This document shows, piece after piece, positions 40,503 through 58,325 of a stretch of DNA of 64,000 nucleotides. The notes under the pieces are model-generated. The model saw nothing but the letters and a program-made list of their open reading frames with translations, was not told where the DNA came from and ran no database searches. Numbering within the stretch: position 1 is the first letter of the stretch; the number at the start of each line of letters is the position of its first letter. The stretch lies in IMG/VR virus record IMGVR_UViG_3300020380_000001, positions 186,001-250,000 of that record; one strand, 5' to 3'. Both the position numbers and the translations under genes were made by a program.

Positions 40503-40513
40503 ATGTCACCTCC

Positions 40514-40927
40514 TTATAGACTTAACAGAACTTTGTCTATCGCACCGTGTGTAAGCTTAAGATCAGGGATCTGTAAACTATCAGTGCTTATGTAACTTCT
40601 GTCTTGCACAAAGCGTAAGAACGTGAAGTTACCGCAGAAGGTAAATGCCGCAACGCCAGACTCAGGATCATCGTTTAATGGGAATTCGATGAAGGCGCCG
40701 TCACAAGAACACGTATAGCCTCGTAACGTTATATCAAACCAATCGTTGTCGTCTGGGTTTAGTGAAAGGGTGCCTTGTATCTTTATACGGCCTATGAAAT
40801 CCTGATAGTGGATAGACACGGTGTGCAGGCCATCTACACTACCGTACCATCCGTCAGCGCGTACACGCTCGCCTACATAATTCCATTCTTGACCTGTATT
40901 AGATGTAAGAAGAACGGGTTGTCTCAT
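40514..40927 (-). CDS. conserved-looking structural-module protein
   Basis: 137 aa; CTAAATAC upstream; GGAGG RBS for the next gene. Confidence 0.75.
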   Translation of the reverse strand: MRQPVLLTSNTGQEWNYVGERVRADGWYGSVDGLHTVSIHYQDFIGRIKIQGTLSLNPDDNDWFDITLRGYTCSCDGAFIEFPLNDDPESGVAAFTFCGNFTFLRFVQDRSYISTDSLQIPDLKLTHGAIDKVLLSL

Positions 40928-40980
40928 TGGGTATCCTACTAGAAAGTTTTATCTTTCCAGTATTTAGTGATACCATTTTA

Positions 40981-41826
40981 TTAGCCGGCTACTAGACCGT
41001 ATTGTAATACCGCCAGTGATAGTGATTCTTTCGGGATTCCTAGTACAGAGATATCGTCTAGATGAAGCTCGATGGCGTCCCGTAGTTCTGCGGGTAGTTG
41101 ACCTTTGTTCATGCTGTGGTCCATGATATAACACCCGTAGCGATAGAAGTCCATCAAATCAGTTTTGGACGGCATAAACACAGGCTTGCCCATAGTGATA
41201 GTCCAGCCTGTACTTTCTGTTTTAGATTCAGTCATGCCGTTACAGCGACTAATCACAGTGTTAGGTATACCGATAGTCGTCTCGTCACGGACTAGTTTCA
41301 CCACCGTCTCATAGTCTTCTTTAAAGTTAAGCACAACAATAGCGTTGACCATTCGCATACATATCTCGTCATTGCGCTTATCGTTATGAAGTCCAAATGT
41401 GCGGTGGTGTGCTATGATATAGAAGCTGCCTGTTTCAGGATCCAGCTTTAAGATGTCGAGTGTACCGTTCATCATACGCAGATAATACTTGTCGTCACCA
41501 AACTGGTAAGCTACACAGCAATCAAGGCCTGTATTCACATACATCAAGTCAGATGCAATTTTTAATTGGCCGTCGAAGTCGTCTTCCCGGACTGCCGCTA
41601 AAAATGTTTTAGAACTGCGGTACATCTTTACGCGTGGTGACTTGAATTGTTTCTCAATCACATATGTTACGTCACGTACCCACTTTTCTACGCGAGCAGA
41701 GTGATGTTTCAGATCTAGTACCTCTGCAGGTGATAGATAAGAAGTCTTCTTTTTGTGCACGTCGAGTAAGGTAGTCAAGCAAGCAATAAACGACGGTATC
41801 GATTTTGTATACTGTTTTTGATGCAT
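40981..41826 (-). CDS. C-terminal-tag array member 16
   Basis: Ends IPKESLSLAVLQYGLVAG. Confidence 0.8.
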   Translation of the reverse strand: MHQKQYTKSIPSFIACLTTLLDVHKKKTSYLSPAEVLDLKHHSARVEKWVRDVTYVIEKQFKSPRVKMYRSSKTFLAAVREDDFDGQLKIASDLMYVNTGLDCCVAYQFGDDKYYLRMMNGTLDILKLDPETGSFYIIAHHRTFGLHNDKRNDEICMRMVNAIVVLNFKEDYETVVKLVRDETTIGIPNTVISRCNGMTESKTESTGWTITMGKPVFMPSKTDLMDFYRYGCYIMDHSMNKGQLPAELRDAIELHLDDISVLGIPKESLSLAVLQYGLVAG

Positions 41827-41828
41827 AA

Positions 41829-42695
41829 TTAATCCACTACTTGGTACTGGTCCTCAATACCGTTTAATTTGATTTGTGCTATTATACGGTTCTTAACCTC
41901 GTCGTCAAGGTTTTTTACGCGGCCAAGCTCATTTATGTTGATAGTTTGGTTATAAGAATAGCCGTGATCGTTTAATAGCTCGCCTGTCTTTGGTTTTCCT
42001 ACATCACTTATGTACTCTACTGTGCTATCAAGCAACGGACCGTAACGTCTGAGTACCAACCATCCTTTCTTATACTCGATACCATGAGTCCCAAAGCTAT
42101 GGTCTATCAAAGCCAGCTTCGAGTTGCCGTCTGTGATATTACTATCCGGGATTTCTTCACAGTATTGAATTGTATCAATACGACCTGTCTGCGCGACAGT
42201 ATGGTAACGCACGAACTTTCTGTCGCTGCGCACTACTAGCGAACAATTACCGACGGTTCCTTTGACTGCGTGTATCTCATAGCTCGGACTGTCATCAACA
42301 CCTGCCGGTGTAAGATTCATTTTGGTAGACACATCTGGGCTGCCTACTCGGTCGGCCGTGCGCGTTATTGTTATGAAGTATTTCCCGGACTCAGGAAGCC
42401 CGGTGCTGATCCTCATGACACGCCGCAGGGCACTAAATGCGACAACGTTTATCTTTGCGCCAGAACTCGTAGTAAATTTAGACTTAGTACCATGTAAAAT
42501 AGGCTCGTTTAATTCGTTCCATTCAAACTCGCTTTCTACATAGTCAAAAAATAGGTTAGCAGCCGTGTTCACTTGTACTATCAAGTGGCGCAGTTTGGCA
42601 GCATCTGTAGCCGGGTGTTCTAGTGAAAATACCGTTTCAAGTCTCCTAACAATAATCTTTAGGTTAGCTTCGGCGATATCAAGAATACTTTCCAT
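41829..42695 (-). CDS. C-terminal-tag array member 15
   Basis: Ends LDDEVKNRIIAQIKLNGIED... Confidence 0.8.
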   Translation of the reverse strand: MESILDIAEANLKIIVRRLETVFSLEHPATDAAKLRHLIVQVNTAANLFFDYVESEFEWNELNEPILHGTKSKFTTSSGAKINVVAFSALRRVMRISTGLPESGKYFITITRTADRVGSPDVSTKMNLTPAGVDDSPSYEIHAVKGTVGNCSLVVRSDRKFVRYHTVAQTGRIDTIQYCEEIPDSNITDGNSKLALIDHSFGTHGIEYKKGWLVLRRYGPLLDSTVEYISDVGKPKTGELLNDHGYSYNQTININELGRVKNLDDEVKNRIIAQIKLNGIEDQYQVVD

Positions 42696-43531
42696 TATTT
42701 TAAGTCTCCCCTAAGGCGCAATTTCGCTATAGTTTCGGCTTTTTCTTCATCGGATAAATTGTCAATCTCCATGAAACGGTTTGCGCCTACTATGACACGG
42801 TACTGATTGTTAAATTCACCAACCAAATCGCCTGCGACAGATGTCAATAACGGTACTACATCCGATGTTATCTCGTCCACTATTCTTAACTTGTTACTGT
42901 CCGCATGCTTCGTCACCAACCAACCGTTAATATGTCTGACATTGTTAGATGGATCCTGCGGGTAGACTGCACATTGCGCTACCGGCATGCCTCGTTCATC
43001 CTTGTCCGGGTCTTCTATCCTGTATACCATGAGCGATGTGTCGCCTAGATACATAATGTGAGTTTCGCCCGGGCTACGTAATACAACTGACGCGCCACGA
43101 TGCGGTTCGCGTGCTACGAAACATGATATATCGTTTCCTGCAGATTCAAACCCGTAAAAGGCAATGTCTGAATCCGTTACGAAGCTTACTATCCGATCGG
43201 GCCTGTGATTGTAATCAGGCGGTACTGTTTTATTATGCGATGCGGCGACTATATTAGCAGTCGTAAAACGGTAATAGTCAACCATTTTGCTGATCGCAGT
43301 GTGTGTCTTGCCGGAAAAATATATGGCACCTTGTATATCACCGCGTGTCACGTCCCAGTACATGGTACCCATCGAATGTAAGGCAGTAACACACCCTATT
43401 AAATCAAGAATAGTGCCTGATAAGGTATCTTTGATAGTTGTGCTTTTTATTGTAGCTAGCGAATCTTTGAGCTTAGCAGGGGCTTCAAGAACTGCCTCTG
43501 CTATTACTCTATCCATAGATGTAGTAGTCAT
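42695..43531 (-). CDS. C-terminal-tag array member 14
   Basis: Ends LSDEEKAETIAKLRLRGDLK. Confidence 0.8.
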   Translation of the reverse strand: MTTTSMDRVIAEAVLEAPAKLKDSLATIKSTTIKDTLSGTILDLIGCVTALHSMGTMYWDVTRGDIQGAIYFSGKTHTAISKMVDYYRFTTANIVAASHNKTVPPDYNHRPDRIVSFVTDSDIAFYGFESAGNDISCFVAREPHRGASVVLRSPGETHIMYLGDTSLMVYRIEDPDKDERGMPVAQCAVYPQDPSNNVRHINGWLVTKHADSNKLRIVDEITSDVVPLLTSVAGDLVGEFNNQYRVIVGANRFMEIDNLSDEEKAETIAKLRLRGDLK

Positions 43532-44274
43532 ACCATCCCCTGTATACGTAACATAGGCAGTGCTATATTATTGGCCAGTAAAGGTTCATATGTCGCTACT
43601 ACTGATTTCAAAGTATAGTACTCCACTCGCTCAACCAACCACCTGTGAACGGTCTTTATTTCAACCGAGTCACTGATTTTTTTCTTTTCCTGCGTTACTG
43701 CGTTGCTGTCTAGTGTGTTGAAATCAAATTCAGTAAACCACGACACACGATCATAATCACGGTTTTGTTCAGACGTAATTTTAATAAAACCTTGTTCCGA
43801 TGTTCCGATTGTGTCTGTCACCGTATACGAACCGTGGTAGCCGTGTGCTGGCACTACAAGATTATAACTAAGGTAACGATCACGTTCCATATCTTTAATG
43901 ATGAACTTGCTATTGTTTAATAAAGCAGTGTACTTGAGCGTTCCTCTACTATAAAGGCTAACTACATGGCTAGTAACTGTTCCGCGCTTGTAATCCACAT
44001 CGTATTGGGTAACAGGAGGCTTTGTTTGCTTAGCAGAGTTTCTCAGGCACCTATGATGCATGTGCATCATCATCGCAACCATTGGGCGTTTCTGCTTGTT
44101 GTGAAAGTTAAGGAACGCCCAGCGTACAAATAACATTAGACGCGCTTCGTCTGAATTTGGTAGAGACTTTAATGGCTTCCTAAAGCTGCGCGTTTTGTTG
44201 TGCGCTGATGCCAGATAAGCCCTAGTCGGCAGATATACGTCGTCCCATATATGATTAATCATCCCATATCCCAA
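43528..44274 (-). CDS. C-terminal-tag array member 13
   Basis: Ends NNIALPMLRIQGMV. Confidence 0.8.
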   Translation of the reverse strand: MGYGMINHIWDDVYLPTRAYLASAHNKTRSFRKPLKSLPNSDEARLMLFVRWAFLNFHNKQKRPMVAMMMHMHHRCLRNSAKQTKPPVTQYDVDYKRGTVTSHVVSLYSRGTLKYTALLNNSKFIIKDMERDRYLSYNLVVPAHGYHGSYTVTDTIGTSEQGFIKITSEQNRDYDRVSWFTEFDFNTLDSNAVTQEKKKISDSVEIKTVHRWLVERVEYYTLKSVVATYEPLLANNIALPMLRIQGMV

Positions 44275-45086
44275 TTTAATAATGCGTTACTCACAACTTC
44301 TTTTGAACAGAAGCCCCGTACCAATACCAATAAGTCACGTATGTTACCGAACGTTCTTGTTTCATCTTTACTGTCACGGTAAACCCACATAGAGCTAGTG
44401 AGTGTGAATTCTTCAGTATCAGAGTCATACGCGTAAGAGTGGTAATTCTTATCTAGTGTGTTCCAGTCAATTACCGTAGTCCATATTGAGTACGACATCA
44501 ACTTAGACGGGAACCCGTCTCTAGTTGTGCCTTTATAGTTCATACGGTATACTGACGTTTCTTTATAGCTGCGCCTAGAAGTAACGGTAAATTCTATTAG
44601 TCCTGTGCTAAACAGTCCACCTCGTAAGAATTCTACCAAGACCACAGCAAAACCATCACCAGTAGCCACTTCCGTTAACGTTACGCCCTTATGCGTCGAA
44701 TAATACACATTGTATACAAGTCGATCCTTAAAGTAAACATCAATATCAATGCCATATTCTCTGGCAGTTTGGTAGTGTACTTGTACCGTAATGTGGTAGT
44801 CAGTGTTGAAAGAAGTTTCTTCTTTTCCTATAGTCGTATTCATAACCTTTTCGATTGAACCACCGCCACATACTCCATAAAAGGACTTGAGCATGCGTTC
44901 TTTTAAGAGCCATGTACCGAGTGCGATGTCAGATTTATTCCCGTGCTTATTCTTCCTTAGTAGTGCACGACACACAGCATACCATGTCTTGCCATCTAAT
45001 ACTTGGCTATACACATTATGCGAGTTAGTGGCGTGATCGTGCATTGTAGAGAACAAATTACCAAACAGTTTCAAATTAACATCCAT
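44259..45086 (-). CDS. C-terminal-tag array member 12
   Basis: Ends SKEVVSNALLNWDMG (weak match). Confidence 0.75.
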   Translation of the reverse strand: MDVNLKLFGNLFSTMHDHATNSHNVYSQVLDGKTWYAVCRALLRKNKHGNKSDIALGTWLLKERMLKSFYGVCGGGSIEKVMNTTIGKEETSFNTDYHITVQVHYQTAREYGIDIDVYFKDRLVYNVYYSTHKGVTLTEVATGDGFAVVLVEFLRGGLFSTGLIEFTVTSRRSYKETSVYRMNYKGTTRDGFPSKLMSYSIWTTVIDWNTLDKNYHSYAYDSDTEEFTLTSSMWVYRDSKDETRTFGNIRDLLVLVRGFCSKEVVSNALLNWDMG

Positions 45087-46023
45087 ACTGTAACCTCATC
45101 ATGGTCATATCTTCTTCCGGCATTAATACTACTCCGTATTTTTCCTGCTCAACTATTATGCGCTTAATATGATTGCGTACCGATTCATAGTCGTGCGGGT
45201 TGTTGGTAGTCAGTAAACCAGACATAGAGAAACACTCTATTTCAAGACCATTCTCAGTCCGGTAATATTTTATCGCACCTGCGCGATATACCCCTTTCGC
45301 CACAATTGTACCAGTCCCATTAACACAGTACGCAGAAAATGCCGGCCTATTGACAATGACTTCTCGCATACGTAAGGACGCGTCCAAAGGATGGTGTATC
45401 GGCGTACTACTAAGCGGCACGGTGAACTTCGCATTAACTCGTAGCGCCTGCATCTGTGCTTCTTTTAAGAAGGGTGTGTCTGAAGGTATGCTGTTCTCTA
45501 CTTGGCCACAATCATAAGAATTATGACGCAAGTAAATAGCCAAGTGTTTGATTCTTTCACATAGCGGTATAACCGGATGCCCAGTCATTACATACTCAAC
45601 ACTAGACGACCTCGTTATACCAATTGGGCTTTCTCTGTGCAGAGATACAGTGACTGAGTAACTTGCACCCTCTGTGCTAGTGGCAGAATTTGCAACGTAC
45701 CTCACCCCAACTAGGTGATTCTTGCTTGCTTGCCAGGTAACAGTCATATCGACATCAGTCCATTTGGCCTCCCTAGTCTTTATTCTAAACATACCCAAGT
45801 CGTTTAGCATGCAAGCTTCGTTCAAATTCTTGTTAACTGGTAACTTCTCTGTTATTGCGAGTATTCCGTTACCTTCGTTAGAAAAAAGATCCAAGAACGT
45901 CCAAAAGTCAAACGGTTCATCTGCCCCCTTGCCGATAGACGCGAAGCGATATAAGTGTCGATAATCATTCATTGCGATTTCAGCAATAGCAGCACTATGC
46001 CTGCAAAGTGTTTCAATAACCAT
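45076..46023 (-). CDS. C-terminal-tag array member 11
   Basis: Ends MPEEDMTMMRLQYGC. Confidence 0.8.
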   Translation of the reverse strand: MVIETLCRHSAAIAEIAMNDYRHLYRFASIGKGADEPFDFWTFLDLFSNEGNGILAITEKLPVNKNLNEACMLNDLGMFRIKTREAKWTDVDMTVTWQASKNHLVGVRYVANSATSTEGASYSVTVSLHRESPIGITRSSSVEYVMTGHPVIPLCERIKHLAIYLRHNSYDCGQVENSIPSDTPFLKEAQMQALRVNAKFTVPLSSTPIHHPLDASLRMREVIVNRPAFSAYCVNGTGTIVAKGVYRAGAIKYYRTENGLEIECFSMSGLLTTNNPHDYESVRNHIKRIIVEQEKYGVVLMPEEDMTMMRLQYGC

Positions 46024-46873
46024 AATTAAGGGCCATAATTGTTGCGTCAGTATCGTTTAAAATTCTCAGGCCTGTTTCGGCTTCTGCCTCTCGCACTTCG
46101 CTTAAGCGATGCGCAGATGTAAACCATTCACCGCTTAATTCGTCATAGCCAAACCCAACTCTTTGATTCGCGACACGCCCATCGGAGCCATACTCTACTA
46201 CTGTACGAATTGGCTTACATGGATTAATGACATAAAATTTAGTGTCTTTGGAAAATGGGAAGTTATCACCATATACAGCAAACGGACGGCGTAGTATTTC
46301 CTTTCGTAACAGTGCGCCACTGCCAGAGTGTCCTTGGGTTTTTGTTAAGTAGCGCCTTGTGTATATGCTTCCTGGAACATACGCCGGTATAGCAACATAC
46401 CGCGACGTACGGAATTCAACAGCGCCGGTTTTATACACTAGCATCGTTAATTGTCGTGTGGCGTTTGATCCACGTTCCGGTGCGCGGTGCCCTTCGGGTA
46501 TTGACTGATGAAGTGACATAAACAGTCGCGTAAATGATGTACGCGGGCTGAGGCGTATAATTGCGTCATAACGCTTACCGGTACCAAAATCAATACCATC
46601 TATGTATATGCCGACCGAGCGTATTCTCTCAGAGTTGCGTACTGAGATTGCCAAGCCGCACATGTTGTATTCGTACTCAAACCCCTCACTTTCACCATCC
46701 GATGCATACGGCAGCACTTCCAATAACTTATTAGTAAAGTCCTGGACAGTATTCATACGCCATTCCGTATGTGTTTCTTTCATGTTGCGCAGGTAAAGCT
46801 TGCCAAAGTGTCGCAAGCCAGTCATAATAATACCTAACGTGCGGTGATCGAATGCTTTATTTCTAGTAACCAT
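46013..46873 (-). CDS. C-terminal-tag array member 10
   Basis: Ends LNDTDATIMALNYGY. Confidence 0.8.
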   Translation of the reverse strand: MVTRNKAFDHRTLGIIMTGLRHFGKLYLRNMKETHTEWRMNTVQDFTNKLLEVLPYASDGESEGFEYEYNMCGLAISVRNSERIRSVGIYIDGIDFGTGKRYDAIIRLSPRTSFTRLFMSLHQSIPEGHRAPERGSNATRQLTMLVYKTGAVEFRTSRYVAIPAYVPGSIYTRRYLTKTQGHSGSGALLRKEILRRPFAVYGDNFPFSKDTKFYVINPCKPIRTVVEYGSDGRVANQRVGFGYDELSGEWFTSAHRLSEVREAEAETGLRILNDTDATIMALNYGY

Positions 46874-47618
46874 TTAACATTCCTGCCCATACTTCTTTAG
46901 TTTCAATTGGTGCTAGATTTCCTTTACCTTTGCGATACGTGTTAACGAACCCCATCCGGCGTGTAAGAGAGCTTTTTTCACCAAAGTCATCTAAAACACC
47001 GACCACTTCCGGCGAGTCAGTTATTTCGAGCGGCAGACTCCACTCCCTAGTAACCCTTGCATCACCTGTTTCGTAGTCCTTAGAACTCACTTGTATCGCT
47101 GGAATATGTGCTTTTACCGGTACAGCTTCAGTAAAGGTAACGTTGCGATATAAGTAACGTATAGTGATCTCGTTGTTTTCGTAATCAATTATAAGCTTTG
47201 AGCCGCTAAGTGAGTTAAACCGAATTTCAATTTTCCTAACTTTTGCACCTTTAGACACTATAATAAGGCTAAGCGCGGGTCGGTGACATTGATCAAGTCC
47301 GATTCTGGTTTTAAGGAATTCATGCGGTACTCGTTCTTCAACACCGCGTTTTTGATACACCGATAGTGTAACCGCATTATAGTAATTACTGGTTTTGGAC
47401 TCGATATAGAAATGTGTTTGACGATCACCTATTTCGTGCGTTTCGCTGAACACGTTACCCTTCTTGACTTGGCTAAGGATACGTGTGTTGTGCTCGCCTA
47501 TTGCTTCGAGCTTTTCTCGAAGCGCATCGAAATCAAGTATACGCGCACGCGATACCATGGGTAGTATTTCCATCGCGTAGCCATAGAACTCTTTAGTTAG
47601 GCCGTACATGTCAAACAT
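46863..47618 (-). CDS. C-terminal-tag array member 9
   Basis: Ends ETKEVWAGMLNGY; AGGAG RBS. Confidence 0.8.
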   Translation of the reverse strand: MFDMYGLTKEFYGYAMEILPMVSRARILDFDALREKLEAIGEHNTRILSQVKKGNVFSETHEIGDRQTHFYIESKTSNYYNAVTLSVYQKRGVEERVPHEFLKTRIGLDQCHRPALSLIIVSKGAKVRKIEIRFNSLSGSKLIIDYENNEITIRYLYRNVTFTEAVPVKAHIPAIQVSSKDYETGDARVTREWSLPLEITDSPEVVGVLDDFGEKSSLTRRMGFVNTYRKGKGNLAPIETKEVWAGMLNGY

Positions 47619-47643
47619 TGTTGCTCTCCTTTATCATAAGCAC

Positions 47644-47672
47644 AATATACGACACAAACAACCGTTAGTCAA
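47644..47672 (-). promoter_or_regulatory. sigma70-like promoter inside the array
   Basis: TTGACT-17-TATATT in a 71-bp gap. Confidence 0.7.
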
Positions 47673-47689
47673 GAAAGTTTTCTAATTGA

Positions 47690-48466
47690 TTACATATACT
47701 GTATTCTGTTTGCGAAAATCTCAGGATAAGTTAAAGGTGGTTGGTTGTATTGTTTGCGCTTTTTGTCGACATAGTCCATAGCATTATTGAAACTACGTTC
47801 ACCAACAATTGCCCATTCTTGCTGTAACACTCGCTCGCTAGACCGCGTGTCATTTACGAAGTCAGTGTTTAATACAAACTGGCGCGGTATGTGTACTCGT
47901 AAAGGCACTCGCTCCTCCCAAAGTCGGCGCTGGGACAGGGTTTCGTAATTGGCCAGAGTTAGCCCTTCGTCAGTTAATGTCACTGAGCGAGATCCAAAAA
48001 AATCAGACTCGGTGCGTATACACAAACCAGCAGAACTAAGTTCTGATTGCTTTGTTAAGTTAACATTCATAGAAACGTCAAGAACGCGTCTATACGGGTG
48101 TGTTTTACGCTTGCGCTTGCCAGGATACGTGCGCAGTGCGTAAACGTTGAAAGACCAGTACATGCTCGCAAGGACAGAGCGACTCACACGTATTTTAAAT
48201 TCACGGCCATTAACTACCAAATTTGGTGATGAATGCTCCCAAGTACCAGCACTTTCACCGAACTGGTTCTTGAGTTCAGAACAAGCCGTTGCGATTTCAA
48301 TAATAGTAGTGTGCCATTTTGTACGAAGCGCACGCATAGTGTCATAAGTAGCTTGCGGATCGGGGCGCCTGACTTGACTAACACCAGTAATAATACTGAA
48401 GCCAGTTTTTATAAAATCAAGTGCGCAGCTTTCAGCTGCCCGTACCGTTGCTTCACTAGGCTTCAC
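47690..48466 (-). CDS. C-terminal-tag array member 8
   Basis: Ends LTYPEIFANRIQYM. Confidence 0.8.
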   Translation of the reverse strand: MKPSEATVRAAESCALDFIKTGFSIITGVSQVRRPDPQATYDTMRALRTKWHTTIIEIATACSELKNQFGESAGTWEHSSPNLVVNGREFKIRVSRSVLASMYWSFNVYALRTYPGKRKRKTHPYRRVLDVSMNVNLTKQSELSSAGLCIRTESDFFGSRSVTLTDEGLTLANYETLSQRRLWEERVPLRVHIPRQFVLNTDFVNDTRSSERVLQQEWAIVGERSFNNAMDYVDKKRKQYNQPPLTYPEIFANRIQYM

Positions 48467-49178
48467 AGATTACACCGTGCTGTAAACAAAGCATTGAGCG
48501 CTCGTTAGAGTCGCTTACGTGCTGTAATTTGTCGTGTACTTGCAGTGCAAGCGATCCGCCCATATAGTTTCTACCGCGCTCAACGATAGTGCTATCAGGG
48601 TGTAAGCGCCATACAGCAAGTGTCGGTGAGTCCATAAATAGTGCGTTTTTGTTAGTAACGCCAACTTCGCGTGCAATATTGATTATTTTTTCTTTCGGCG
48701 ATGTTGCGTCAAACATTTTTTTATGACTTTTTTTCAACGATGCGTCAATGTTAAATGGAAATTTGGTTGTCGCCGCTTCAAGGCTAACGTGTTTAACACG
48801 ATAGCTGTCGTCGCTATATGAACTAAACACTGTATTCAGCACAACATATGCACGGTCATGCAAGTTTACTTTGCCGTTTGAACGTTCTAACACACTAATT
48901 GTAGCAGTTACGCTCACTGTGCCTGGACGATATTCTTCAAACGTATAGTTTTCAGCTACATCTAAAGTTAAGCAATATTTGGCATTTTTTGTATCAAGCA
49001 ATGTCATTGGGACACCTTGGTACACGCCAGATTTGATCATCGAATCACATAAACCAGGAATCAAATTAAGGATTTCTTCAGCGCCTTCGTACGATGCACT
49101 ATCACGAAGTCTAAAGTTGTGACGCGCTTTGATTAACTTTTTTACAAACGTATTGATTTCAGCAGCTAATTCTTTCAT
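48456..49178 (-). CDS. C-terminal-tag array member 7
   Basis: Ends SDSNERSMLCLQHGVICEA. Confidence 0.8.
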   Translation of the reverse strand: MKELAAEINTFVKKLIKARHNFRLRDSASYEGAEEILNLIPGLCDSMIKSGVYQGVPMTLLDTKNAKYCLTLDVAENYTFEEYRPGTVSVTATISVLERSNGKVNLHDRAYVVLNTVFSSYSDDSYRVKHVSLEAATTKFPFNIDASLKKSHKKMFDATSPKEKIINIAREVGVTNKNALFMDSPTLAVWRLHPDSTIVERGRNYMGGSLALQVHDKLQHVSDSNERSMLCLQHGVICEA

Positions 49179-49831
49179 AAACCTTGCAACCTTGTAAGTG
49201 TAATAAGTCTAGTCTTTTCTTCGTCAGCAATGTTTAATCTCTTTATCTGTTCAACAACACTGCCACCGCTATAATTGACATTATATACGATTGCCTGTTT
49301 GGTTGTCAAGCAGAATTCTGAATATTGTTTCATTGGTATTAACGGAAACGTAAGGCCAAGTTCAGATCGTAAGTATTCGTCCTCTCTAGTCCATGATATA
49401 TAAGACTTTCCTGATGATTCATACAAAACAAGAGTAAGAGCCCTTTTTCCAAATCTTGTGTCACTTAGAACTACACTAGTAGGACTGCCTGGTTTCGTGA
49501 TCACTGTGAGTCTACGTGTTACATGGCGTTCTTCGTCATCTGACAGTATTTGTTTTTGTATAGATAATATCTCAAAATGCATTGCCTCAATTCTGGTTGC
49601 CGGCTTGCGTGCGCTTACGCCTACTTTATGCGTATCACCGTCGTATATAATCCCATCGCGCATTACAGTCGCGCCCGGGCATGCTTGGTTTACTGCTAGA
49701 CGACTTAAGCTTGCTATCTGTAAAACGAACGATTCCATGGCATCAGTATCATATGCTCTTCTTAGTGAGCGCACATTGCTGGTTACCAGCTTGCCTATGT
49801 GGTTTACGGTTTCTAATATTTCATCACGCAT
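49175..49831 (-). CDS. C-terminal-tag array member 6
   Basis: Ends IADEEKTRLITLTRLQGL. Confidence 0.8.
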   Translation of the reverse strand: MRDEILETVNHIGKLVTSNVRSLRRAYDTDAMESFVLQIASLSRLAVNQACPGATVMRDGIIYDGDTHKVGVSARKPATRIEAMHFEILSIQKQILSDDEERHVTRRLTVITKPGSPTSVVLSDTRFGKRALTLVLYESSGKSYISWTREDEYLRSELGLTFPLIPMKQYSEFCLTTKQAIVYNVNYSGGSVVEQIKRLNIADEEKTRLITLTRLQGL

Positions 49832-50624
49832 ATTGAAGCCTTAGCATTGCGATACGGTTTGGGTCAACCTTCTTTTCATTATTACCTATACGATTGCGTA
49901 TGTGTAAGTCAATATCATTTCGAGTGAAATACGCGTTATTGCCGAACTCATTATCGTCAGCGTCAAACACTGATGTTTCGATTGACGGGGATTCCAAAAA
50001 CAACGGATAGCTTTCTACATTACCTACGTTACGTTTTAAATGCATATACGCGATACCTGTTTGCGACAATATTTTAATAGGAAACCTGGACATACTATAC
50101 GACACACGAATTACCGATTTTGAATCAGAACTAGTATGGCCAGGCACAGCGGCTGATCGAATAGATAACTTAAATGGCTTCTTTGCTAGGTACGAGTTGG
50201 ATACTGTTACCGTAAAGCCGTTGTCGCTCTCTGAATTATAAAAAGTGCTTATTGTCAATGTAAGCTCGTGTATGAACACTGATATCGACAGACTTTCTGC
50301 CGTGAATGGATCCCGTATGAGTCGTATATGACTAGAGTTCAAACCAGTCGAGTGCGCTAATTCAGCATAAGACATCGCTTCTACGACTTTGCGGGCTTTG
50401 TTGGCTATCGATACATGTGCGCGTCTAGTTCGCTTAAACTTGCCTTTAGTTGTAGTCAGATACAACCTGTTCTTTAACACACACTCAAGCAGATCTTTAG
50501 TACTTTTCATATACCGCTTATAGCCAGGCGTATTATCGTATACTCTACGATTCCTAATAGGCTCATATACTCGTTGCGTGAACCCATCTATATCCAATAT
50601 GTCCATGTTAATATTGCTCCCCAA
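49824..50624 (-). CDS. C-terminal-tag array member 5
   Basis: Ends VDPNRIAMLRLQYA. Confidence 0.8.
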   Translation of the reverse strand: MGSNINMDILDIDGFTQRVYEPIRNRRVYDNTPGYKRYMKSTKDLLECVLKNRLYLTTTKGKFKRTRRAHVSIANKARKVVEAMSYAELAHSTGLNSSHIRLIRDPFTAESLSISVFIHELTLTISTFYNSESDNGFTVTVSNSYLAKKPFKLSIRSAAVPGHTSSDSKSVIRVSYSMSRFPIKILSQTGIAYMHLKRNVGNVESYPLFLESPSIETSVFDADDNEFGNNAYFTRNDIDLHIRNRIGNNEKKVDPNRIAMLRLQYA

Positions 50625-51510
50625 GTACGAACAATGCTGCGGTAGACCGTTTTAGTATCGGCCCATGCATCTCTTCAACCAGTTTGGCTTCTTCTAAATA
50701 CTGACGTAACGTCATTGTTATATCAAACCCGTAGCGCCAGCGTCTTAGGTTTAGTTCTAATTTGTTAGTGCCCGATACTTGCACATATGTAGAAACTACA
50801 GGCACAAACGGTCTGAATAACTCAAGTGATTCGTACATCCAATAATCCGCGGTACACATTGCCTTATCAGTAACAGTACATGACATAAGACGGGTGTCTG
50901 TGTTTTTATTTGCCACAAATACTATCTCACCGATATTAGACGATAGACGAACCTTTCTTTCAGCTGAAGATACACCGTCCCAGTTAGACCATAATCCAGT
51001 GCGTGCGGTTGCTGTGACGTACCGGTGCTCCATATAAAACTCGTATGAAGCTCTAGACCAGCGCCTATAGAATACCGCACTTGGGCCGTATAACTTTGTC
51101 TTAGTGAGTTTGCTATGCTTACTAAAGGTTATTTGCACCGTGTACACAACGTCGTTATATTCAATAGTAACACCGTAACACTCACTGGTATAATCACCGT
51201 CCACGATACATACGTTAGACGGATCGACAGTATGCATCCGCTTACGCGTCAACGTTACTTTTACGTTAGTGCCAGGCAAACGACACAAGTAAACCGGATT
51301 AAAATCACCTGACTTTAAAATAGCAGGGCCAATTTCTTCATCAACGAACGACATAAAATCGCCCATCAACTTATGCATTGTTTTACCTACACCGACAACG
51401 CCTATATCCTCCCGTGGACCAAATCTAAACGACACCTTCCGTCTAGTTTCAACACGTTCTTTGCGCAGGCGCATTAAGTGCGTCAGTAGTTTGTTTCCTG
51501 GGTTACGCAT
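50608..51510 (-). CDS. C-terminal-tag array member 4
   Basis: Ends LKRSTAALFVLGEQY (weak match). Confidence 0.75.
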   Translation of the reverse strand: MRNPGNKLLTHLMRLRKERVETRRKVSFRFGPREDIGVVGVGKTMHKLMGDFMSFVDEEIGPAILKSGDFNPVYLCRLPGTNVKVTLTRKRMHTVDPSNVCIVDGDYTSECYGVTIEYNDVVYTVQITFSKHSKLTKTKLYGPSAVFYRRWSRASYEFYMEHRYVTATARTGLWSNWDGVSSAERKVRLSSNIGEIVFVANKNTDTRLMSCTVTDKAMCTADYWMYESLELFRPFVPVVSTYVQVSGTNKLELNLRRWRYGFDITMTLRQYLEEAKLVEEMHGPILKRSTAALFVLGEQY

Positions 51511-52375
51511 AATTCAACCTCATTAAGGCAAACTGTTCTTCTGTTAACCGATCACCAATACACCACTCGGCCACTGTTTCGCAAGAACCGCTTAGTGTCG
51601 GCAGGGACTCGTAATCAGCGAGAAACACGTTTTCTGCTATTACGGTGCTACTGGTATCGTAATACTTGTCGAAACTAGCAAACATCATGGTAGACTCTTC
51701 GTTGTTGAGAACTTTAGTCCCAGGATGGTAACGACACGAAATTGCATTAGGACCCGGGTTAGCGTAGTCAAACCGTCTCATATACACTATCCGTGTCCCA
51801 TGTCTATATGCAAGTGAATGTCCGCGCACCCAGATCGCACAAAGCCCTCTTCTCGAGGAGGCATACGCTATATGAATAGGACGCTCGATAGTCATGTCTT
51901 TGTTTGGGCTGCTCATGTTTATAGTCAACATGTAGTCGCTTCTAGGCTGGTGCTTATAAAACCGTAACGTGAAGTCAACGTGAACATTACCAGCGACCAC
52001 GATAGTTACTCGACGAGAAAACCTGTCCTGCCAAGTTACTTTGGGATCATATTCTGCTACTTCTTCAAGTTCGACTTTGGGTATGAAATCCACATTGTAT
52101 AGCTTAGACGCAATATAAGTAGATAACAATGAGCTGCCGACTAGACGAAACACTGCGCGTTCAACCGGGCGACCATCATCATCCATTATACGGTTAATAC
52201 GTTTGGCTATTGCTAGATGAGTCATTTTGCAATCGTTGGAAAGTGCATCGTTTATAGCTTTTATGTTGGCGACAACATCATACCCAAACACGTAGGAATC
52301 CTTATAATTTTCCATCACCGTACTCCATTTTAAGTCGTAGACGTTCTTCGGCGGATACGCGGGATAGTACGTCAT
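51503..52375 (-). CDS. C-terminal-tag array member 3
   Basis: Ends LTEEQFALMRLNYA; true start may be MENYKDS at 52318. Confidence 0.8.
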   Translation of the reverse strand: MTYYPAYPPKNVYDLKWSTVMENYKDSYVFGYDVVANIKAINDALSNDCKMTHLAIAKRINRIMDDDGRPVERAVFRLVGSSLLSTYIASKLYNVDFIPKVELEEVAEYDPKVTWQDRFSRRVTIVVAGNVHVDFTLRFYKHQPRSDYMLTINMSSPNKDMTIERPIHIAYASSRRGLCAIWVRGHSLAYRHGTRIVYMRRFDYANPGPNAISCRYHPGTKVLNNEESTMMFASFDKYYDTSSTVIAENVFLADYESLPTLSGSCETVAEWCIGDRLTEEQFALMRLNYA

Positions 52376-53033
52376 TAAACTCTACAGGGATATCATTTAA
52401 CATCCACTGAGCCCTTAGCACTTGTTTCACAGCACTAAAGTCATCCACATCGTATTGGAAAGTAACAGCGGCAGGGCGCTCCGTTGAATGAATGACAAAA
52501 TCATTAATTATTTGATCTGCATTCATATTAACCGGATCTAACCCTGTATTACTGTAATACCCGTGAGTCATAACACACGGAGTGTGTCCGGATACAATTT
52601 TTTTCGTTCCGTCTATATGTTCCATAGCAACACTCATTGACGTTGACGAGTTATAAACATACTTGACCGCGTCCGTCGTACCAACGCCTTCAACAATAAT
52701 CAAAGTAGGCGGCCAGTTTCCTTGACGAGACTCTTCAAGAGTGCGAGTGGCGATCGCTGCCATTGTTTCACGAGTGTATTGCGTGTGAAATGTCATACCA
52801 ATACTAGTACGCGAGGTTGGACTCGTAAACATTACGCTAGTCACTAACTTGCGATTGGCGGTTAGCACAATACCATATTGTCGTTTGATTTCGGCCGCAC
52901 GGCCGTTTATATAAGTGGCTGCGCATTCGTGCCTAGACGGTATGCCGATTATGGTTGTCATTGTAGTCATCTTAAAGAAAAGGTCTTCAAGATTTCTTGG
53001 CAATGTGGATAAGCTGGAGATTGTATCTAGCAT
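52302..53033 (-). CDS. C-terminal-tag array member 2
   Basis: Ends VSAEERLRLKMEYGDGKL. Confidence 0.8.
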   Translation of the reverse strand: MLDTISSLSTLPRNLEDLFFKMTTMTTIIGIPSRHECAATYINGRAAEIKRQYGIVLTANRKLVTSVMFTSPTSRTSIGMTFHTQYTRETMAAIATRTLEESRQGNWPPTLIIVEGVGTTDAVKYVYNSSTSMSVAMEHIDGTKKIVSGHTPCVMTHGYYSNTGLDPVNMNADQIINDFVIHSTERPAAVTFQYDVDDFSAVKQVLRAQWMLNDIPVEFNDVLSRVSAEERLRLKMEYGDGKL

Positions 53034-53096
53034 CGTTGCCTTCTTTGTTAAACGTGTATAATGTTAGATTAACAAAGTCGGCAACAAGAAACAAGA

Positions 53097-53891
53097 TTAT
53101 CCGTAATTTAATCTATATAAGAGGTATTCTGAAGGGCTAAGGTGTCGTTTAAGATAATAGTCACCCATGCCACTGAGTGCGGATTTCAAATCACATAAAT
53201 CAATCAGTGTGTATGAGCTATGAACTGGCCCATCGCTGTTTGGTGGTCTGTGGTGTGATTCATACATAGCAAAGCATTCGTCAACAGTAATGTCTTTTAC
53301 TCTACTACCAGCGCCCGGAACAAAGTCTTCATGAAGAGATAGCCAGAATTTAATTGACCGACCAAACGGCATGGGCGCGTCAGTCATTTTGCGGCCTAAT
53401 ACTTTAGCTGGATTTGGAAGATACGATATCCGTTGGCTATAGTCGCTGATAGAAATAGATAATACTGACCTCCCACTTGCTACACGCACATCAAGAGCAG
53501 GTATACCGTGTGCATAGTTATTCACAGTGAGCTTTGTCGTGAAACGAGCGGTGTCATTTGGGTTTATTAAACTAAGATACTCTGACTTGTTAATCTCCCA
53601 AACCCTATCTTTGCCAGTAACAGATTTTCCGTTTATCACTAAATCAGTCATAGGCCATCTAGGTGACACAGTATCACCGATATATCTTACGCGTGTCTTT
53701 ATGATTATCCTTGATAGCTCACATACACACGAGTGGATGCATTTCAAATCTTCTACTACTTGATCAGCAAAAATACTGAAGTCCTTCTTATTACGTGTCA
53801 GTTTGCGCACTCGGCGAAAACTATTCAACACATCATCGAAGTTAGACGAAAGCTCTACTTTCTTGTCACCAAATTCTGCATAACTATTCAT
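53097..53891 (-). CDS. C-terminal-tag array member 1
   Basis: Ends LSPSEYLLYRLNYG. Confidence 0.8.
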   Translation of the reverse strand: MNSYAEFGDKKVELSSNFDDVLNSFRRVRKLTRNKKDFSIFADQVVEDLKCIHSCVCELSRIIIKTRVRYIGDTVSPRWPMTDLVINGKSVTGKDRVWEINKSEYLSLINPNDTARFTTKLTVNNYAHGIPALDVRVASGRSVLSISISDYSQRISYLPNPAKVLGRKMTDAPMPFGRSIKFWLSLHEDFVPGAGSRVKDITVDECFAMYESHHRPPNSDGPVHSSYTLIDLCDLKSALSGMGDYYLKRHLSPSEYLLYRLNYG

Positions 53892-54481
53892 TGCATCTCC
53901 AAGAGTGAACAGAACCTACTTGTGCATTCAGGTTTCTTGCTGGCTATATTAAAACGATTCTTAATGCGCGTGATACATAGCTTGATAAGACCTGCTTTTT
54001 GCGTAACGTCCTCTGAATACTCAAGTCCGCGCTTGTACACGAACCCTGCATTATAAGACGCAAGAGCCATTGGATGATTGCCGCCACGTATACGCAACCA
54101 GTATTTTATCTCGTTTATGGCAAGATGTGCGCCGAGACCTTGATCCATTACTAAGTCTTGGGCGAGCACGTTCGCCATAAACGAATCCCTGTCTATCCCA
54201 AGACGGCTTGTAGCCGTGTCAATATGGATTGCATACGGACCAAAGCTAGGATCGTTTATATTCAACAAGTACTTGCCGAGTTTACTTTCCCGCCACGCAA
54301 TAGCAGGAAGCACAGACTCAAGCCCGTACTCCTTGCCAATCTCATAGCTAGTTACCAACACGTTCGCTTGATCGTGGTTTATTCTGATGTTTGCATCGCA
54401 GAACTCGTCTATAGCTTGGTGCTGTGTACTACTCACAGTCAAGCCCAACGTAACGCCTACGACAGCGAATATGTTAATCAT
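53888..54481 (-). CDS. soluble lytic transglycosylase (SLT)-domain protein
   Basis: AIAWRES catalytic Glu motif, FGPYAI, ALASYNAG; hydrophobic N-terminal signal/SAR. Confidence 0.85.
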   Translation of the reverse strand: MINIFAVVGVTLGLTVSSTQHQAIDEFCDANIRINHDQANVLVTSYEIGKEYGLESVLPAIAWRESKLGKYLLNINDPSFGPYAIHIDTATSRLGIDRDSFMANVLAQDLVMDQGLGAHLAINEIKYWLRIRGGNHPMALASYNAGFVYKRGLEYSEDVTQKAGLIKLCITRIKNRFNIASKKPECTSRFCSLLEMQ

Positions 54482-55785: not shown

Positions 55786-56429
55786 CGTCTATCCTTACTT
55801 TTTCTAACCAATGTGAGTATGGTATCAGATATATCCCTAAATGGCTGGATTATATCATGCTGAGCAATATCCGGGTTATTGTATCGCGCAACTAACGCGT
55901 AATACTTACGGTACAATTCATACATTTCGTTCCAGTCATCACACAAACGAAGATATTCTTCGCGAAATTCGGAATCAGTTTTGCTGCGGATGAATCCAGT
56001 TATGTTGGATTCATTAGTGACGTTCATATCCAACATCGGCCAGTTATCTGATCCAGTACGTATACCGGCAGCGTCTAGGAAGTCTAGATACTCATGTAAC
56101 AAGCGAATACTGGCTGAAGTGTCTAACACCTTAATGCCATGTACTTTGCGATACAGGGTTTCACTGAACGCGATAATTTGATCATCACTGTTAATCGGCG
56201 CGTCTTCTGTTTCAGATTCTGAGTAGCGCTGTATAACTTTTTGATCAACAAGGTTCGCGGCAAGCATGGCTGGATCACCAACAGTCGGTGCGCCCATTGG
56301 CGACAGTATAGACATTAGTCTACAAAAATAAGGACACTCGCTGTGGTCATTTGTGTTGAACATAACAACACGTTCACTAGCCAACGCTTTGAGGTTAGCT
56401 TCGATATATTCATCCGGATCTAAAATCAT
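55782..56429 (-). CDS. hypothetical protein
   Basis: 215-aa acidic ORF, coupled. Confidence 0.75.
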   Translation of the reverse strand: MILDPDEYIEANLKALASERVVMFNTNDHSECPYFCRLMSILSPMGAPTVGDPAMLAANLVDQKVIQRYSESETEDAPINSDDQIIAFSETLYRKVHGIKVLDTSASIRLLHEYLDFLDAAGIRTGSDNWPMLDMNVTNESNITGFIRSKTDSEFREEYLRLCDDWNEMYELYRKYYALVARYNNPDIAQHDIIQPFRDISDTILTLVRKSKDRR

Positions 56430-56932: not shown

Positions 56933-57191
56933 ACTTCACCTTTTCTAAGTACGCTTCGTACTCAATTTCATCTATATAGACAAATACACTGCCGTCTTGT
57001 ACAGCAAGACCAAAGTCAGCCAAGTTGTCGGCTACACTATGTTGTAATTCGTCTCCGCCCCATATCAACGCAACTAAGTAGGCTTTAAACCACAAGAAGC
57101 GTTCTTCGGAGTCGTTAATCCACAGCCATACAAAGGCTTCAGTAATACTGAGCTCGTCGTATTTCTTGACTGTCTGCGTCTTCTTACTCAT
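56919..57191 (-). CDS. hypothetical protein
   Basis: Coupled 90-aa ORF. Confidence 0.65.
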   Translation of the reverse strand: MSKKTQTVKKYDELSITEAFVWLWINDSEERFLWFKAYLVALIWGGDELQHSVADNLADFGLAVQDGSVFVYIDEIEYEAYLEKVKYEKS

Positions 57192-58191: not shown

Positions 58192-58298
58192 ATAATTTCA
58201 TCCTTTTTATACTTTTGTATATTGTAGCATCTAGGAAAAGTTTTACAAGTAGAAAACACAAATGAAAAACTTTTATTTTTACCTGAAGACGAAAGATG

Positions 58299-58322
58299 AA
58301 AAAAGGGGCAGTGTGCCCCTTT
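58299..58322 (-). terminator. intrinsic terminator after clpA
   Basis: AAAAAAGGGGCA-GTG-TGCCCCTTT hairpin. Confidence 0.75.
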
Positions 58323-58325
58323 CAA

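What the first reader, a model, noticed from the sequence alone, without database searches (positions are those of the whole stretch)
40981..53891. 13-kb array of 16 divergent early genes sharing only a C-terminal helical tag ([RK]-[LI]-[QN]-[YG]-G)
Seen: 16 consecutive, mostly overlapping ORFs of 218-315 aa with no body similarity visible by eye. They end in an acidic-then-hydrophobic helix: PEEDMTMMRLQYG, DPNRIAMLRLQYA, TEEQFALMRLNYA, SPSEYLLYRLNYG, NDTDATIMALNYG, KESLSLAVLQYG, YPEIFANRIQY, SNERSMLCLQHG, DEEKTRLITLTRLQG, ALPMLRIQG, DEEKAETIAKLRLRG, DEVKNRIIAQIKLNG. An internal TTGACT-17-TATATT promoter points to early, host-sigma70 expression. Caveat, also seen: in several members the final Y-G/Y-A is forced by the next gene's ATG (T-ATG-G) or its RBS. 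However, the R-L-Q/N core lies upstream of the overlap. The motif also persists in the three members with no downstream overlap (40981, 47690, 53097), two of which use TAC for Tyr. Inference: variable substrate-binding bodies share one docking peptide for a common hub, like F-box/PRANC adaptors. Candidate hubs include the phage's own ClpA (IGF loop intact, 4.4 kb away), a host machine or a membrane site. This would be a diversified host-takeover or anti-defence arsenal.
Basis: partly seen in the sequence, partly recalled or inferred. Interest (0 to 1): 0.88.

Follow-up and report, generated by a model that had tools for sequence, protein, structure and literature searches.

The report
Orphan 16-gene phage family, shared tail
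An abundant, uncultured marine giant phage carries 16 back-to-back genes with no detectable relatives anywhere, whose proteins share only a short helix at their very end; the pattern is real and not an artefact, but what the helix does is still unknown.

Summary
Observation confirmed. Sixteen co-oriented, tightly coupled minus-strand genes (218-315 aa) fill 40981-53891. A leave-one-out profile of the last 14 residues ranks 13 of 16 tails first or second among 174 ORF ends. Three members (g04, g09, g12) are degenerate. No other ORF in the 64-kb window carries the motif, including 16 other tightly coupled genes. The motif is selected at protein level. Leu, Gln/Asn and Tyr codons vary, and uncoupled members keep Arg and Tyr with codons (AGA, TAC) that destroy the downstream ribosome site and ATG. 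It is also partly dual-coded: Arg is AGG, a Shine-Dalgarno core, in 5 of 9 cases. Bodies show no significant shared similarity, only a few pairwise traces. All 16 are under purifying selection but evolve faster than their flanks. Searches with members g03, g14 and g15 of billions of proteins found only close variants of this phage. Structure prediction was weak: one marginal model, one failure, no fold match. Best reading: a lineage-specific tandem paralog family whose stop/start junction is doubly constrained, probably accessory host-interaction genes read from sigma70-like promoters. The docking-tag and ClpA hub idea is neither supported nor excluded.

The parts
53097..53891 (-). g01, 264 aa, tail ...YRLNYG; not coupled to the next gene (63-nt gap)
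   Evidence: LOO rank 1; Arg=AGA, Tyr=TAC
52302..53033 (-). g02, 243 aa, tail ...RLKMEYGDGKL
   Evidence: LOO rank 1
51503..52315 (-). g03, 270 aa (290 aa from the upstream ATG at 52375), tail ...MRLNYA
   Evidence: GAGG-7 nt-ATG of g04 lies inside the tail codons
50608..51510 (-). g04, 300 aa, degenerate tail ...FVLGEQY
   Evidence: rank 32 of 174: motif not supported
49824..50606 (-). g05, 260 aa (266 aa from TTG at 50624), tail ...LRLQYA
   Evidence: AlphaFold model failed apart from the C-terminal helices
49175..49831 (-). g06, 218 aa, tail ...TRLQGL (long-helix, G-type tail)
   Evidence: AlphaFold model pLDDT 56, pTM 0.54
48456..49178 (-). g07, 240 aa, tail ...LCLQHGVICEA
   Evidence: rank 1
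47690..48466 (-). g08, 258 aa, tail ...NRIQYM; not coupled (71-nt gap follows)
   Evidence: rank 2; Arg=AGA
47619..47689 (-). Intergenic gap with the sigma70-like site TTGACT-17-TATATT (47672-47644) and the RBS of g09; 94% identical in the sister phage
46863..47618 (-). g09, 251 aa, degenerate tail ...GMLNGY
   Evidence: rank 48: not supported by the profile
46013..46873 (-). g10, 286 aa, tail ...MALNYGY
   Evidence: rank 1
45076..46023 (-). g11, 315 aa, tail ...MMRLQYGC (best match to the family profile)
44259..45086 (-). g12, 275 aa, degenerate tail ...ALLNWDMG; shares an internal WxTxxDxNTLD block with g13
   Evidence: rank 20; repeat D1
43528..44262 (-). g13, 244 aa (248 aa from TTG at 44274), tail ...MLRIQGMV
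   Evidence: (rank 2)
42695..43531 (-). g14, 278 aa, tail ...KLRLRGDLK
   Evidence: (BLAST E 2e-4 to g15)
41829..42695 (-). g15, 288 aa, tail ...QIKLNGIEDQYQVVD (motif 10 residues from the end)
40981..41826 (-). g16, 281 aa, tail ...AVLQYGLVAG; last member, not coupled
   Evidence: rank 1; Tyr=TAC
53034..53096 (-). Intergenic gap between g01 and g02; 89% identical in the sister phage; only a weak sigma70-like match
58221..58323 (-). Strong terminator-like hairpin (58323-58301) after the ClpA gene, followed by the sigma70-like site TTGTAA-16(TG)-TACAAT (58248-58221); likely head of the long operon that runs into the array
40959..40967 (-). CTAAATACT, one of five copies of a motif lying 32-67 nt upstream of minus-strand genes; marks the start of the next unit just downstream of the array

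Best explanation
The region is a lineage-specific multigene family.

Origin (inferred). One ancestral gene of about 250-300 codons was duplicated in tandem many times, each time together with its overlapping stop/start junction. The copies then diverged until their bodies are no longer recognisably similar.

The junction is held by two constraints at once (shown). At protein level it encodes a C-terminal amphipathic helix. The helix has an N-cap of S/T/D-x-E/D-E/D, then hydrophobic residues, then [R]-[LI]-[QN]-[YG]-[GA], with Gly ending the helix. At nucleotide level the Arg codon (AGG) and the Tyr-Gly codons (T-ATG-G) supply the Shine-Dalgarno core and start codon of the next cistron. The 16 genes are therefore likely translated by coupling.

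Expression (partly shown, partly inferred). The genes are read from sigma70-like promoters as part of a long operon that begins after the ClpA terminator. They are separate from the motif-marked unit (f137 and the tail-fibre-type genes) just downstream.

Likely role (inferred). The proteins are soluble, lack any known domain, evolve two to five times faster than their neighbours and exist only in this phage lineage. They are therefore most likely accessory host-interaction factors (takeover or counter-defence) with diversified bodies.

Job of the tail (unresolved). The conserved tail helix does one common job. That job is either packing against the N-terminal helices to close a common fold, or contacting a common partner. 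I lean slightly to the first.
For: - Sixteen same-strand genes of similar length in tandem.
- Tail motif specific to the array and highly significant.
- Synonymous codon variety at the conserved Leu, Gln/Asn and Tyr positions. Arg and Tyr are kept as AGA and TAC where there is no downstream overlap.
- AGG at 5 of 9 motif Arg positions, against 11% of Arg codons in the bodies (p 0.0016).
- SD-7 nt-ATG lies inside the tail codons of g03, g05 and g11.
- Zero of 16 other coupled genes carry the motif.
- Traces of body paralogy. g12/g13 share a block at the same relative position, with 75% DNA identity and 743-nt spacing. g01/g03 share N-terminal similarity, z 5.6. g14/g15 give BLAST E 2e-4. Colinear global similarity shows a weak excess: mean z 0.61 against 0.25 for reversed controls, and 5 pairs above z 3 against 0.
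- All 16 have 1:1 orthologues in the sister phage. Their dN/dS is 0.13-0.37 against 0.03-0.18 for flanking genes. Their identity is 73-95% against 77-99% for flanks (7 of 10 flanks at 94% or more).
- No homologues beyond this lineage in 5.8e9 and 1.84e9 proteins, PHROGs, Pfam or PADLOC.
- The AlphaFold model of g06 shows two N-terminal helices, eight antiparallel strands and a C-terminal helix-loop-helix. In both models the tail is helical and among the most confident parts.
- Promoter context.
Against: - Common descent of the bodies is not demonstrated. With tails removed, phmmer, leave-one-out family profiles and hhalign give no signal above shuffled or reversed controls.
- The g06 model is marginal (pLDDT 56, pTM 0.54), the g05 model failed (pLDDT 36), and both used the same paralogue alignment. 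A shared fold is therefore not shown.
- No Foldseek match.
- Between the sister phages the tails are not clearly more constrained than the bodies: pN/pS is 0.24 against 0.28.
- Function and timing rest on context only.
- The other 242 kb of the genome were not scanned.
Confidence: 0.55

Rival explanations
1. The variable bodies bind different targets, and the shared C-terminal helix is a docking peptide that brings them to one hub: the phage ClpA, a host machine or a membrane site. This would be the phage analogue of F-box/PRANC adaptors. It is compatible with the duplication origin and differs only in what the tail does.
For: The tail is the only element conserved across 13 of 16 members and is selected at protein level. 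Polar Arg and Gln/Asn positions are conserved, not just the hydrophobic ones. A complete ClpA with Clp_N domain and IGF loop lies 4.4 kb upstream in the same orientation. The bodies evolve fast.
Against: No interaction evidence of any kind. The motif sits 0-10 residues from the C-terminus, so it is not a fixed C-degron. It is the second helix of a predicted helix-loop-helix that could pack internally. The Arg conservation is partly explained by the SD of the next gene. ClpA homologues occur in other jumbo phages (Phosso, Atu_ph07, PA5oct); no homologue of array member g11 was found in that phage collection, and the one ClpA-carrying genome inspected, Phosso, has no such array beside its tail genes. 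The tail profile finds nothing in PDB sequences.
Confidence: 0.25
2. The proteins are packaged internal or ejected proteins. The C-terminal helix-loop-helix would be a capsid- or scaffold-targeting signal, like the capsid targeting sequence that is the only shared feature of the diverse T-even internal proteins.
For: [quoted passage not shown] The array is embedded among virion-type genes: f137, tail-fibre-like genes, and a virion protein at 61431-62261. Translational coupling would be expected to give similar doses.
Against: The tag is C-terminal, not N-terminal. The CTAAATA[AC]T motif found upstream of the neighbouring structural-type genes is absent from the array. The array's own gaps carry sigma70-like sites. 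No protease-site pattern was looked for or seen.
Confidence: 0.12
3. The motif is only the translation of nucleotide signals (Shine-Dalgarno, spacer, ATG) needed to start the next gene. It has no protein-level meaning.
For: AGG is enriched at the Arg position, and SD-7 nt-ATG lies inside the tail codons of g03, g05 and g11. Tyr-Gly equals T-ATG-G in four members. Both pS and pN drop in the last 18 codons.
Against: Zero of 16 other tightly coupled genes show the motif, against 8 of 12 coupled array genes (hypergeometric p about 1.6e-4 by my calculation). g01, g08 and g16 keep the motif without any downstream overlap, using AGA and TAC, and the sister phage conserves these tails. Codons for Leu, Gln and Asn vary freely. 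The conserved pattern extends about 10 residues upstream of any SD.
Confidence: 0.05

Closest known systems
T-even phage internal proteins (IPI, IPII, IPIII and their polymorphic locus) with the capsid targeting sequence
   Same: A cluster of highly diverse phage proteins whose only shared feature is a short terminal peptide, with counter-defence roles for at least IPI (PMC3012670).
   Different: Their tag is N-terminal and, from my own knowledge, cleaved by the prohead protease; the proteins are late and packaged. Here the tag is a C-terminal helix, the proteins are about 250-300 aa, expression looks sigma70-driven, and packaging is untested. No sequence similarity.
Poxvirus ankyrin/PRANC and other F-box-like adaptor multigene families (own knowledge)
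   Same: Tandemly expanded, fast-evolving viral paralogues with variable bodies and a short conserved C-terminal helical motif that docks to a common hub.
   Different: No ankyrin or other repeats and no F-box/PRANC signature (Pfam scan). The virus is bacterial. The hub is unknown and docking is unproven.
Paralogous protein families of giant phages such as the SPN3US/phiKZ-type ejection proteins
   Same: Giant phages carry a bolus of ejection proteins in the head (abstract of PMC5694885); that these proteins form lineage-specific paralogue sets is my own knowledge.
   Different: From my own knowledge, those paralogues are recognisably similar along their length and are virion proteins processed by the prohead protease. 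Here only the tail is recognisable and a virion location is unknown.
Ordinary translational coupling by overlapping stop/start (ATGA, TAATG) in phage operons (own knowledge)
   Same: Thirteen of the 15 internal junctions overlap or abut. The SD and start of the next gene lie inside the upstream coding sequence.
   Different: The 8- and 11-nt overlaps that place ATG inside Tyr-Gly/Ala codons are peculiar to this array. The encoded peptide is itself conserved, also where coupling has been lost.

Membership tests
F-box / PRANC adaptor proteins | F-box or PRANC sequence signature at the C-terminus | tested here: not met
   The Pfam scan of all 32 array proteins at E<=1 gave no F-box, PRANC or related family.
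F-box / PRANC adaptor proteins | Repeat-type substrate-binding body (ANK, LRR, WD40, Kelch) | tested here: not met
   No repeat family was hit. The AlphaFold model of g06 shows a helical hairpin plus a beta sheet, not repeats (low confidence).
F-box / PRANC adaptor proteins | Binding of the tag to a Skp1-like hub | not testable with these tools
   No complex prediction or binding assay is available here.
T4-type internal proteins with capsid targeting sequence | Shared N-terminal targeting peptide removed by the prohead protease | tested here: not met
   The shared peptide is C-terminal. The N-termini share nothing beyond Met plus a residue forced by the overlap.
T4-type internal proteins with capsid targeting sequence | Late expression and presence in the virion | not testable with these tools
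   Only context is available: sigma70-like sites and no CTAAATA[AC]T motif inside the array.
Tandem paralogue family (common descent of whole genes) | Same orientation, similar length, adjacent, same junction architecture | tested here: met
Tandem paralogue family (common descent of whole genes) | Significant similarity of the bodies, not only of the tail | tested here: inconclusive
   Only a few pairs show it (g12/g13; g01/g03; g14/g15), plus a weak global excess. phmmer, leave-one-out profiles and hhalign give no signal.
Tandem paralogue family (common descent of whole genes) | Shared fold | tested here: inconclusive
   The g06 model is marginal (pTM 0.54) and the g05 model failed (pTM 0.21).
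C-terminal degrons for Clp unfoldases (ssrA-like) | Recognition motif at the extreme C-terminus with a free carboxylate at a fixed distance | tested here: not met
   The motif is followed by 0 to 10 further residues of varied sequence.
Sigma70 region 4 (first helix, L-S/T-x-x-E-x-x-h-h-x-L-R-Y-G) | Match to the Sigma70_r4 / r4_2 models and a following helix-turn-helix | tested here: not met
   No such Pfam hit at E<=1. The tail profile finds no PDB sequence at E<=10. The proteins end where the helix-turn-helix would begin. The resemblance came from memory and was not borne out.
By-product of translational coupling | Same peptide at the ends of other coupled genes; loss of the peptide where coupling is lost | tested here: not met
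   Zero of 16 other coupled genes carry it. g01, g08 and g16 keep it uncoupled.

The most novel reading that the evidence does not exclude
The 16 proteins are a phage-encoded adaptor arsenal. Each fast-evolving body captures a different host or defence protein. The shared C-terminal helix plugs all of them into one hub, for example the N-domain of the phage's own ClpA, for unfolding or degradation. This would be a bacterial-virus counterpart of eukaryotic-virus F-box/PRANC families, encoded in a translationally coupled cassette whose junction is dual-coded.
Probability: 0.1. Interest if true: 0.85.

Novelty: new variant of a known kind. Interest (0 to 1): 0.5.

Why it matters
- The two phage lineages carrying the array were recovered in at least 40 and at least 130 assembly blocks respectively. 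Many of the recovered records are Tara Oceans and other marine samples, so this is an abundant uncultured jumbo phage.
- It devotes 13 kb, about 4% of its genome, to a family with no relatives in billions of proteins.
- Large tandem families with only a terminal peptide in common are well known in eukaryotic viruses. In phages I know of only one close case, the T-even internal proteins.
- A second phage case, with a C-terminal tag, would give a handle on how giant phages diversify host-interaction genes.
- The junction is also a clean natural example of a peptide motif and a ribosome-binding site/start codon being conserved in the same nucleotides. Uncoupled copies show which constraint is which.
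- The proteins are small and soluble, so they can be synthesised and tested without culturing the phage.

Tried and rejected
- **Family and domain scans.** PHROGs, Pfam and PADLOC scans of all members gave nothing.
- **Phage genome searches.** megablast of the region and tblastn of g11 against 50,697 phage genomes gave nothing.
- **Large protein searches.** Word-indexed searches of 5.8e9 proteins with g15 and g03 returned only close variants (90-100% identical) from this phage lineage. A full HMMER search of 1.84e9 representatives with a g14/g15 profile returned only their own clusters. It also returned one spurious hit to a 1204-aa repeat protein, where six copies of a short SIVVRSDGE-like repeat summed to 60 bits.
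- **Body-homology tests with tails removed.** phmmer against shuffles, leave-one-out family HMMs and hhalign of two-sequence profiles against reversed controls all gave no signal.
- **Structure.** AlphaFold with the 32-sequence paralogue alignment gave a marginal model for g06 and failed for g05. Foldseek of the g06 model gave no hit below E 0.3 against PDB. Against BFVD the best hit was one uncharacterised protein at E 1e-3 with TM 0.32.
- **Sigma70 region 4.1 idea.** I thought the tail might copy sigma70 region 4.1. This was not supported.
- **Syntenic arrays in distant relatives.** Regions around the phrog_8578 homologue in Phosso, Bajun and BL47 contain no such array.
- **Metagenome and IMG/VR scans with flanking genes.** These recovered only the same two phage lineages plus an unrelated T4-like contig.
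- **Other features.** Rfam found no RNA family in 40000-58500. DNA repeats at the junctions were not found, so the junctions are not recombination linkers.
- **Tail versus body constraint between sister phages.** No clear difference.

Full report
**What the window is.**
The window is part of a 306.5-kb uncultured viral genome, IMGVR_UViG_3300020380_000001, also recovered as MDTA01088739.1. A sister genome of about 310 kb also exists (IMGVR_UViG_3300020277_000001 / CEUD01013717.1). The window carries 17 ARAGORN-predicted tRNA genes. It also has a 2136-aa ORF, tail-fibre-like genes and a full ClpA homologue. Its structural proteins are only about 33-37% identical to those of giant siphoviruses of alphaproteobacteria: Sinorhizobium phage Phosso, and Brevundimonas and Caulobacter Dolichocephalovirinae. 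The region itself has no DNA match among 50,697 phage genomes. Both lineages recur in many marine assemblies, in at least 40 and at least 130 collection blocks, with contigs of about 308-313 kb.

**The observation.**
Sixteen minus-strand ORFs, g01 to g16, of 218-315 aa run from 53891 down to 40981. Public gene calls on other assemblies of the same phage give the same 16 genes. They use shorter starts for g03, g05 and g13, matching the better ribosome sites I saw. With these starts, 13 of the 15 internal junctions overlap or abut, by -2 to +17 nt. Two internal gaps remain (53034-53096 and 47619-47689), and a third gap follows g16.

All 16 have one-to-one orthologues in the same order in the sister phage, at 73-95% amino-acid identity. 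Their dN/dS is 0.13-0.37, so they are real genes under purifying selection. Ten flanking genes are 77-99% identical, seven of them 94% or more, with dN/dS 0.03-0.18. The array therefore evolves two to five times faster than its flanks.

**The tail.**
- Anchored on the motif, the tails read as follows. First comes a hydrophobic residue, then S/T/D, x and acidic residues. Next comes a hydrophobic stretch of 3-4 residues, then [R/K]-[L/I]-[Q/N]-[Y/G]-[G/A].
- There are two subtypes. The Y-G type comprises g01, g02, g03, g05, g08, g10, g11 and g16, with variants in g07 and g12. The G type has a helix one turn longer and comprises g06, g13, g14 and g15, with a variant in g09.
- A simple pattern hits 11/16 array tails, against 0/41 other minus-strand ORFs and 2/173 of all other ORFs (p 2e-8 and 2e-12).
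- In a leave-one-out 14-column profile, 10 tails rank first and 3 rank second among 174 ORF ends. g04, g09 and g12 cannot be told from controls.
- With the full profile, no position in any other ORF of the window scores above 12 bits, while all 16 tails score 15-31.
- AlphaFold puts the tail in a helix that ends at the Leu-Gln, preceded by another helix. This holds in both models, and these are among the most confident residues.

**Is the motif a coding by-product?**
Partly, but not mainly.
- In g03, g05 and g11 the tail codons spell GAGG or AAGG, then 7 nt, then ATG for the next gene. The Tyr-Gly/Ala codons contain that ATG.
- At the motif's Arg position the codon is AGG in 5 of 9 cases, against 11% of Arg codons in the bodies (p 0.0016).
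- Against a pure by-product, the Leu/Ile, Gln/Asn and Tyr positions use many synonymous codons.
- The uncoupled g01 and g16 use TAC, and g01 and g08 use AGA. These keep the amino acids while destroying the SD and ATG.
- These tails are 13-15 of 15 identical in the sister phage.
- None of 16 other tightly coupled genes in the window has anything like the motif, against 8 of 12 coupled array genes.

The tail is a protein-level feature, and in most copies it doubles as a translation-initiation signal.

**Are the bodies related?**
Sequence methods cannot show it.
- BLAST finds only g14/g15 (E 2e-4).
- With tails removed, phmmer hits are no better than to shuffles.
- Leave-one-out family HMMs give a mean z of 0.4.
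- hhalign of two-sequence profiles is no better than reversed controls.

There are traces, however.
- g12 and g13 share a WxTxxDxNTLD block at the same relative position, with 75% DNA identity and a spacing of one gene length.
- g01 and g03 share an N-terminal helix segment, z 5.6.
- Global alignments show a weak excess of colinear similarity: mean z 0.61 against 0.25, and five pairs above z 3 against none.

The g06 model is marginal (pLDDT 56, pTM 0.54). It shows two N-terminal helices, eight antiparallel strands and a C-terminal helix-loop-helix. The g05 model failed, at pLDDT 36. Foldseek found no credible match in PDB or BFVD. Tandem duplication with extreme divergence remains the most economical origin, but it is an inference.

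**Relatives elsewhere.**
None were found.
- PHROGs, Pfam and PADLOC gave nothing.
- Word-indexed searches of 5.8e9 proteins with g15 and g03 returned only close variants (90-100% identical) from this phage lineage.
- A full HMMER search of 1.84e9 representatives with a g14/g15 profile gave only their own clusters and one spurious repeat-driven hit.
- Distant relatives of the phage have no such array next to the shared structural gene.

**Context and timing.**
- A strong terminator-like hairpin follows the ClpA gene (58323-58301). It is followed by a sigma70-like site with an extended -10 (58248-58221). From there, overlapping genes run into g01. They include a macro-domain protein and a 197-aa protein that by eye has lytic-transglycosylase motifs.
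- Promoter-like matches as such are not enriched, at 42 against 38 expected.
- A different motif, CTAAATA[AC]T, occurs five times on the minus strand, each 32-67 nt upstream of a gene start. One copy lies upstream of f137 just downstream of the array. There are none on that strand inside the array.
- The array therefore looks like a sigma70-driven unit, separate from the motif-marked structural-type genes that follow it. This fits early or middle expression but does not prove it.

**What the tail does.**
This could not be resolved.
- For the hub idea: only the tail is conserved, including its polar positions, and a complete ClpA with an IGF loop is nearby.
- Against it: there is no interaction evidence. 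The motif lies at a variable distance (0-10 residues) from the end. Part of the Arg conservation is explained by the SD. Between the sister phages the tails are not clearly more constrained than the bodies.
- An equally simple reading is that the helix packs on the N-terminal helices of a common fold.
- A third reading borrows from the T-even internal proteins, which share only a capsid targeting sequence (PMC3012670). The promoter context does not favour it.

**Verdict.**
The thing is a new, orphan, tandem gene family in an abundant marine jumbo phage, with a dual-coded junction. The docking-tag and hub mechanism remains an attractive but untested hypothesis.

Noticed in passing
window 937-945, 22689-22697, 24460-24468, 30028-30036, 40959-40967 (all minus strand): CTAAATA[AC]T occurs six times against 2.0 expected. 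All five minus-strand copies lie 32-67 nt upstream of a minus-strand start codon, including the virion-type gene f137 and the 949-aa head-decoration-like gene. This is a candidate phage-specific promoter, possibly late, reminiscent of T4's TATAAATA.
   Followed up: partly
window 1095-1104, 12184-12193, 25732-25741, 40941-40950, 47672-47681, 58235-58244: AAAACTTTYY occurs six times against 0.92 expected (0 of 100 shuffles reach 6). At least four of the six copies lie in intergenic DNA, two of them overlapping sigma70-like -35 regions. The arrangement is not consistent and the meaning is unknown.
   Followed up: partly
window 3501-3597 (-): ARAGORN calls a 97-nt 'tRNA-Stop' with anticodon TTA between two tRNA-Ser genes. 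The Rfam tRNA model does not report it at gathering score, so it is doubtful. If real it would be an ochre-suppressor-like tRNA in a phage whose genes here read normally with TAA stops.
   Followed up: partly
window 1266-11011 (-): There is a cluster of about 17-20 tRNA genes. ARAGORN and Rfam each find some that the other misses (for example Rfam-only hits at 3899-3970, 5057-5132 and 10762-10833).
   Followed up: no
window 58326-60581 (-): A full-length ClpA homologue is present, with Clp_N, two Walker A motifs and IGF at 605-607. It is 37-39% identical to the ClpA of jumbo phages Phosso, Atu_ph07 and PA5oct. No ClpP or ClpS turned up among the roughly 20 neighbouring proteins scanned; the rest of the window was not checked.
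   Followed up: partly
window 53888-54481 (-) and 56426-56932 (-): The gene just upstream of the array (phrog_600, 197 aa) has an N-terminal hydrophobic segment and, by eye, lytic-transglycosylase-like motifs (E-S, AYNAG-like). A macro-domain protein (phrog_335 'phosphatase') lies 2.5 kb upstream in the same overlapping gene string.
   Followed up: no
window 14713-21123 (-), 22708-23988 (-): A 2136-aa ORF has no PHROG match. A 426-aa protein matches RCC1-like ('regulator of chromosome condensation') repeat families.
   Followed up: no
P0006 (sister-phage g03), L019/L020: NCBI carries the sister phage's g03 as 'MAG: hypothetical protein [Sphingobium sp.]'. The phage was therefore binned with an alphaproteobacterial MAG. 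This is a weak host hint, or a mis-binning, consistent with the alphaproteobacterial hosts of its nearest cultured relatives. In L020 the 197-aa upstream gene is split into 113- and 60-aa calls.
   Followed up: no
L011 21917-28579 (Sinorhizobium phage Phosso): Six consecutive hypothetical genes of 315-395 aa follow the phrog_8578 homologue in Phosso. They may form another tandem family. I did not compare them with each other or with the array.
   Followed up: no
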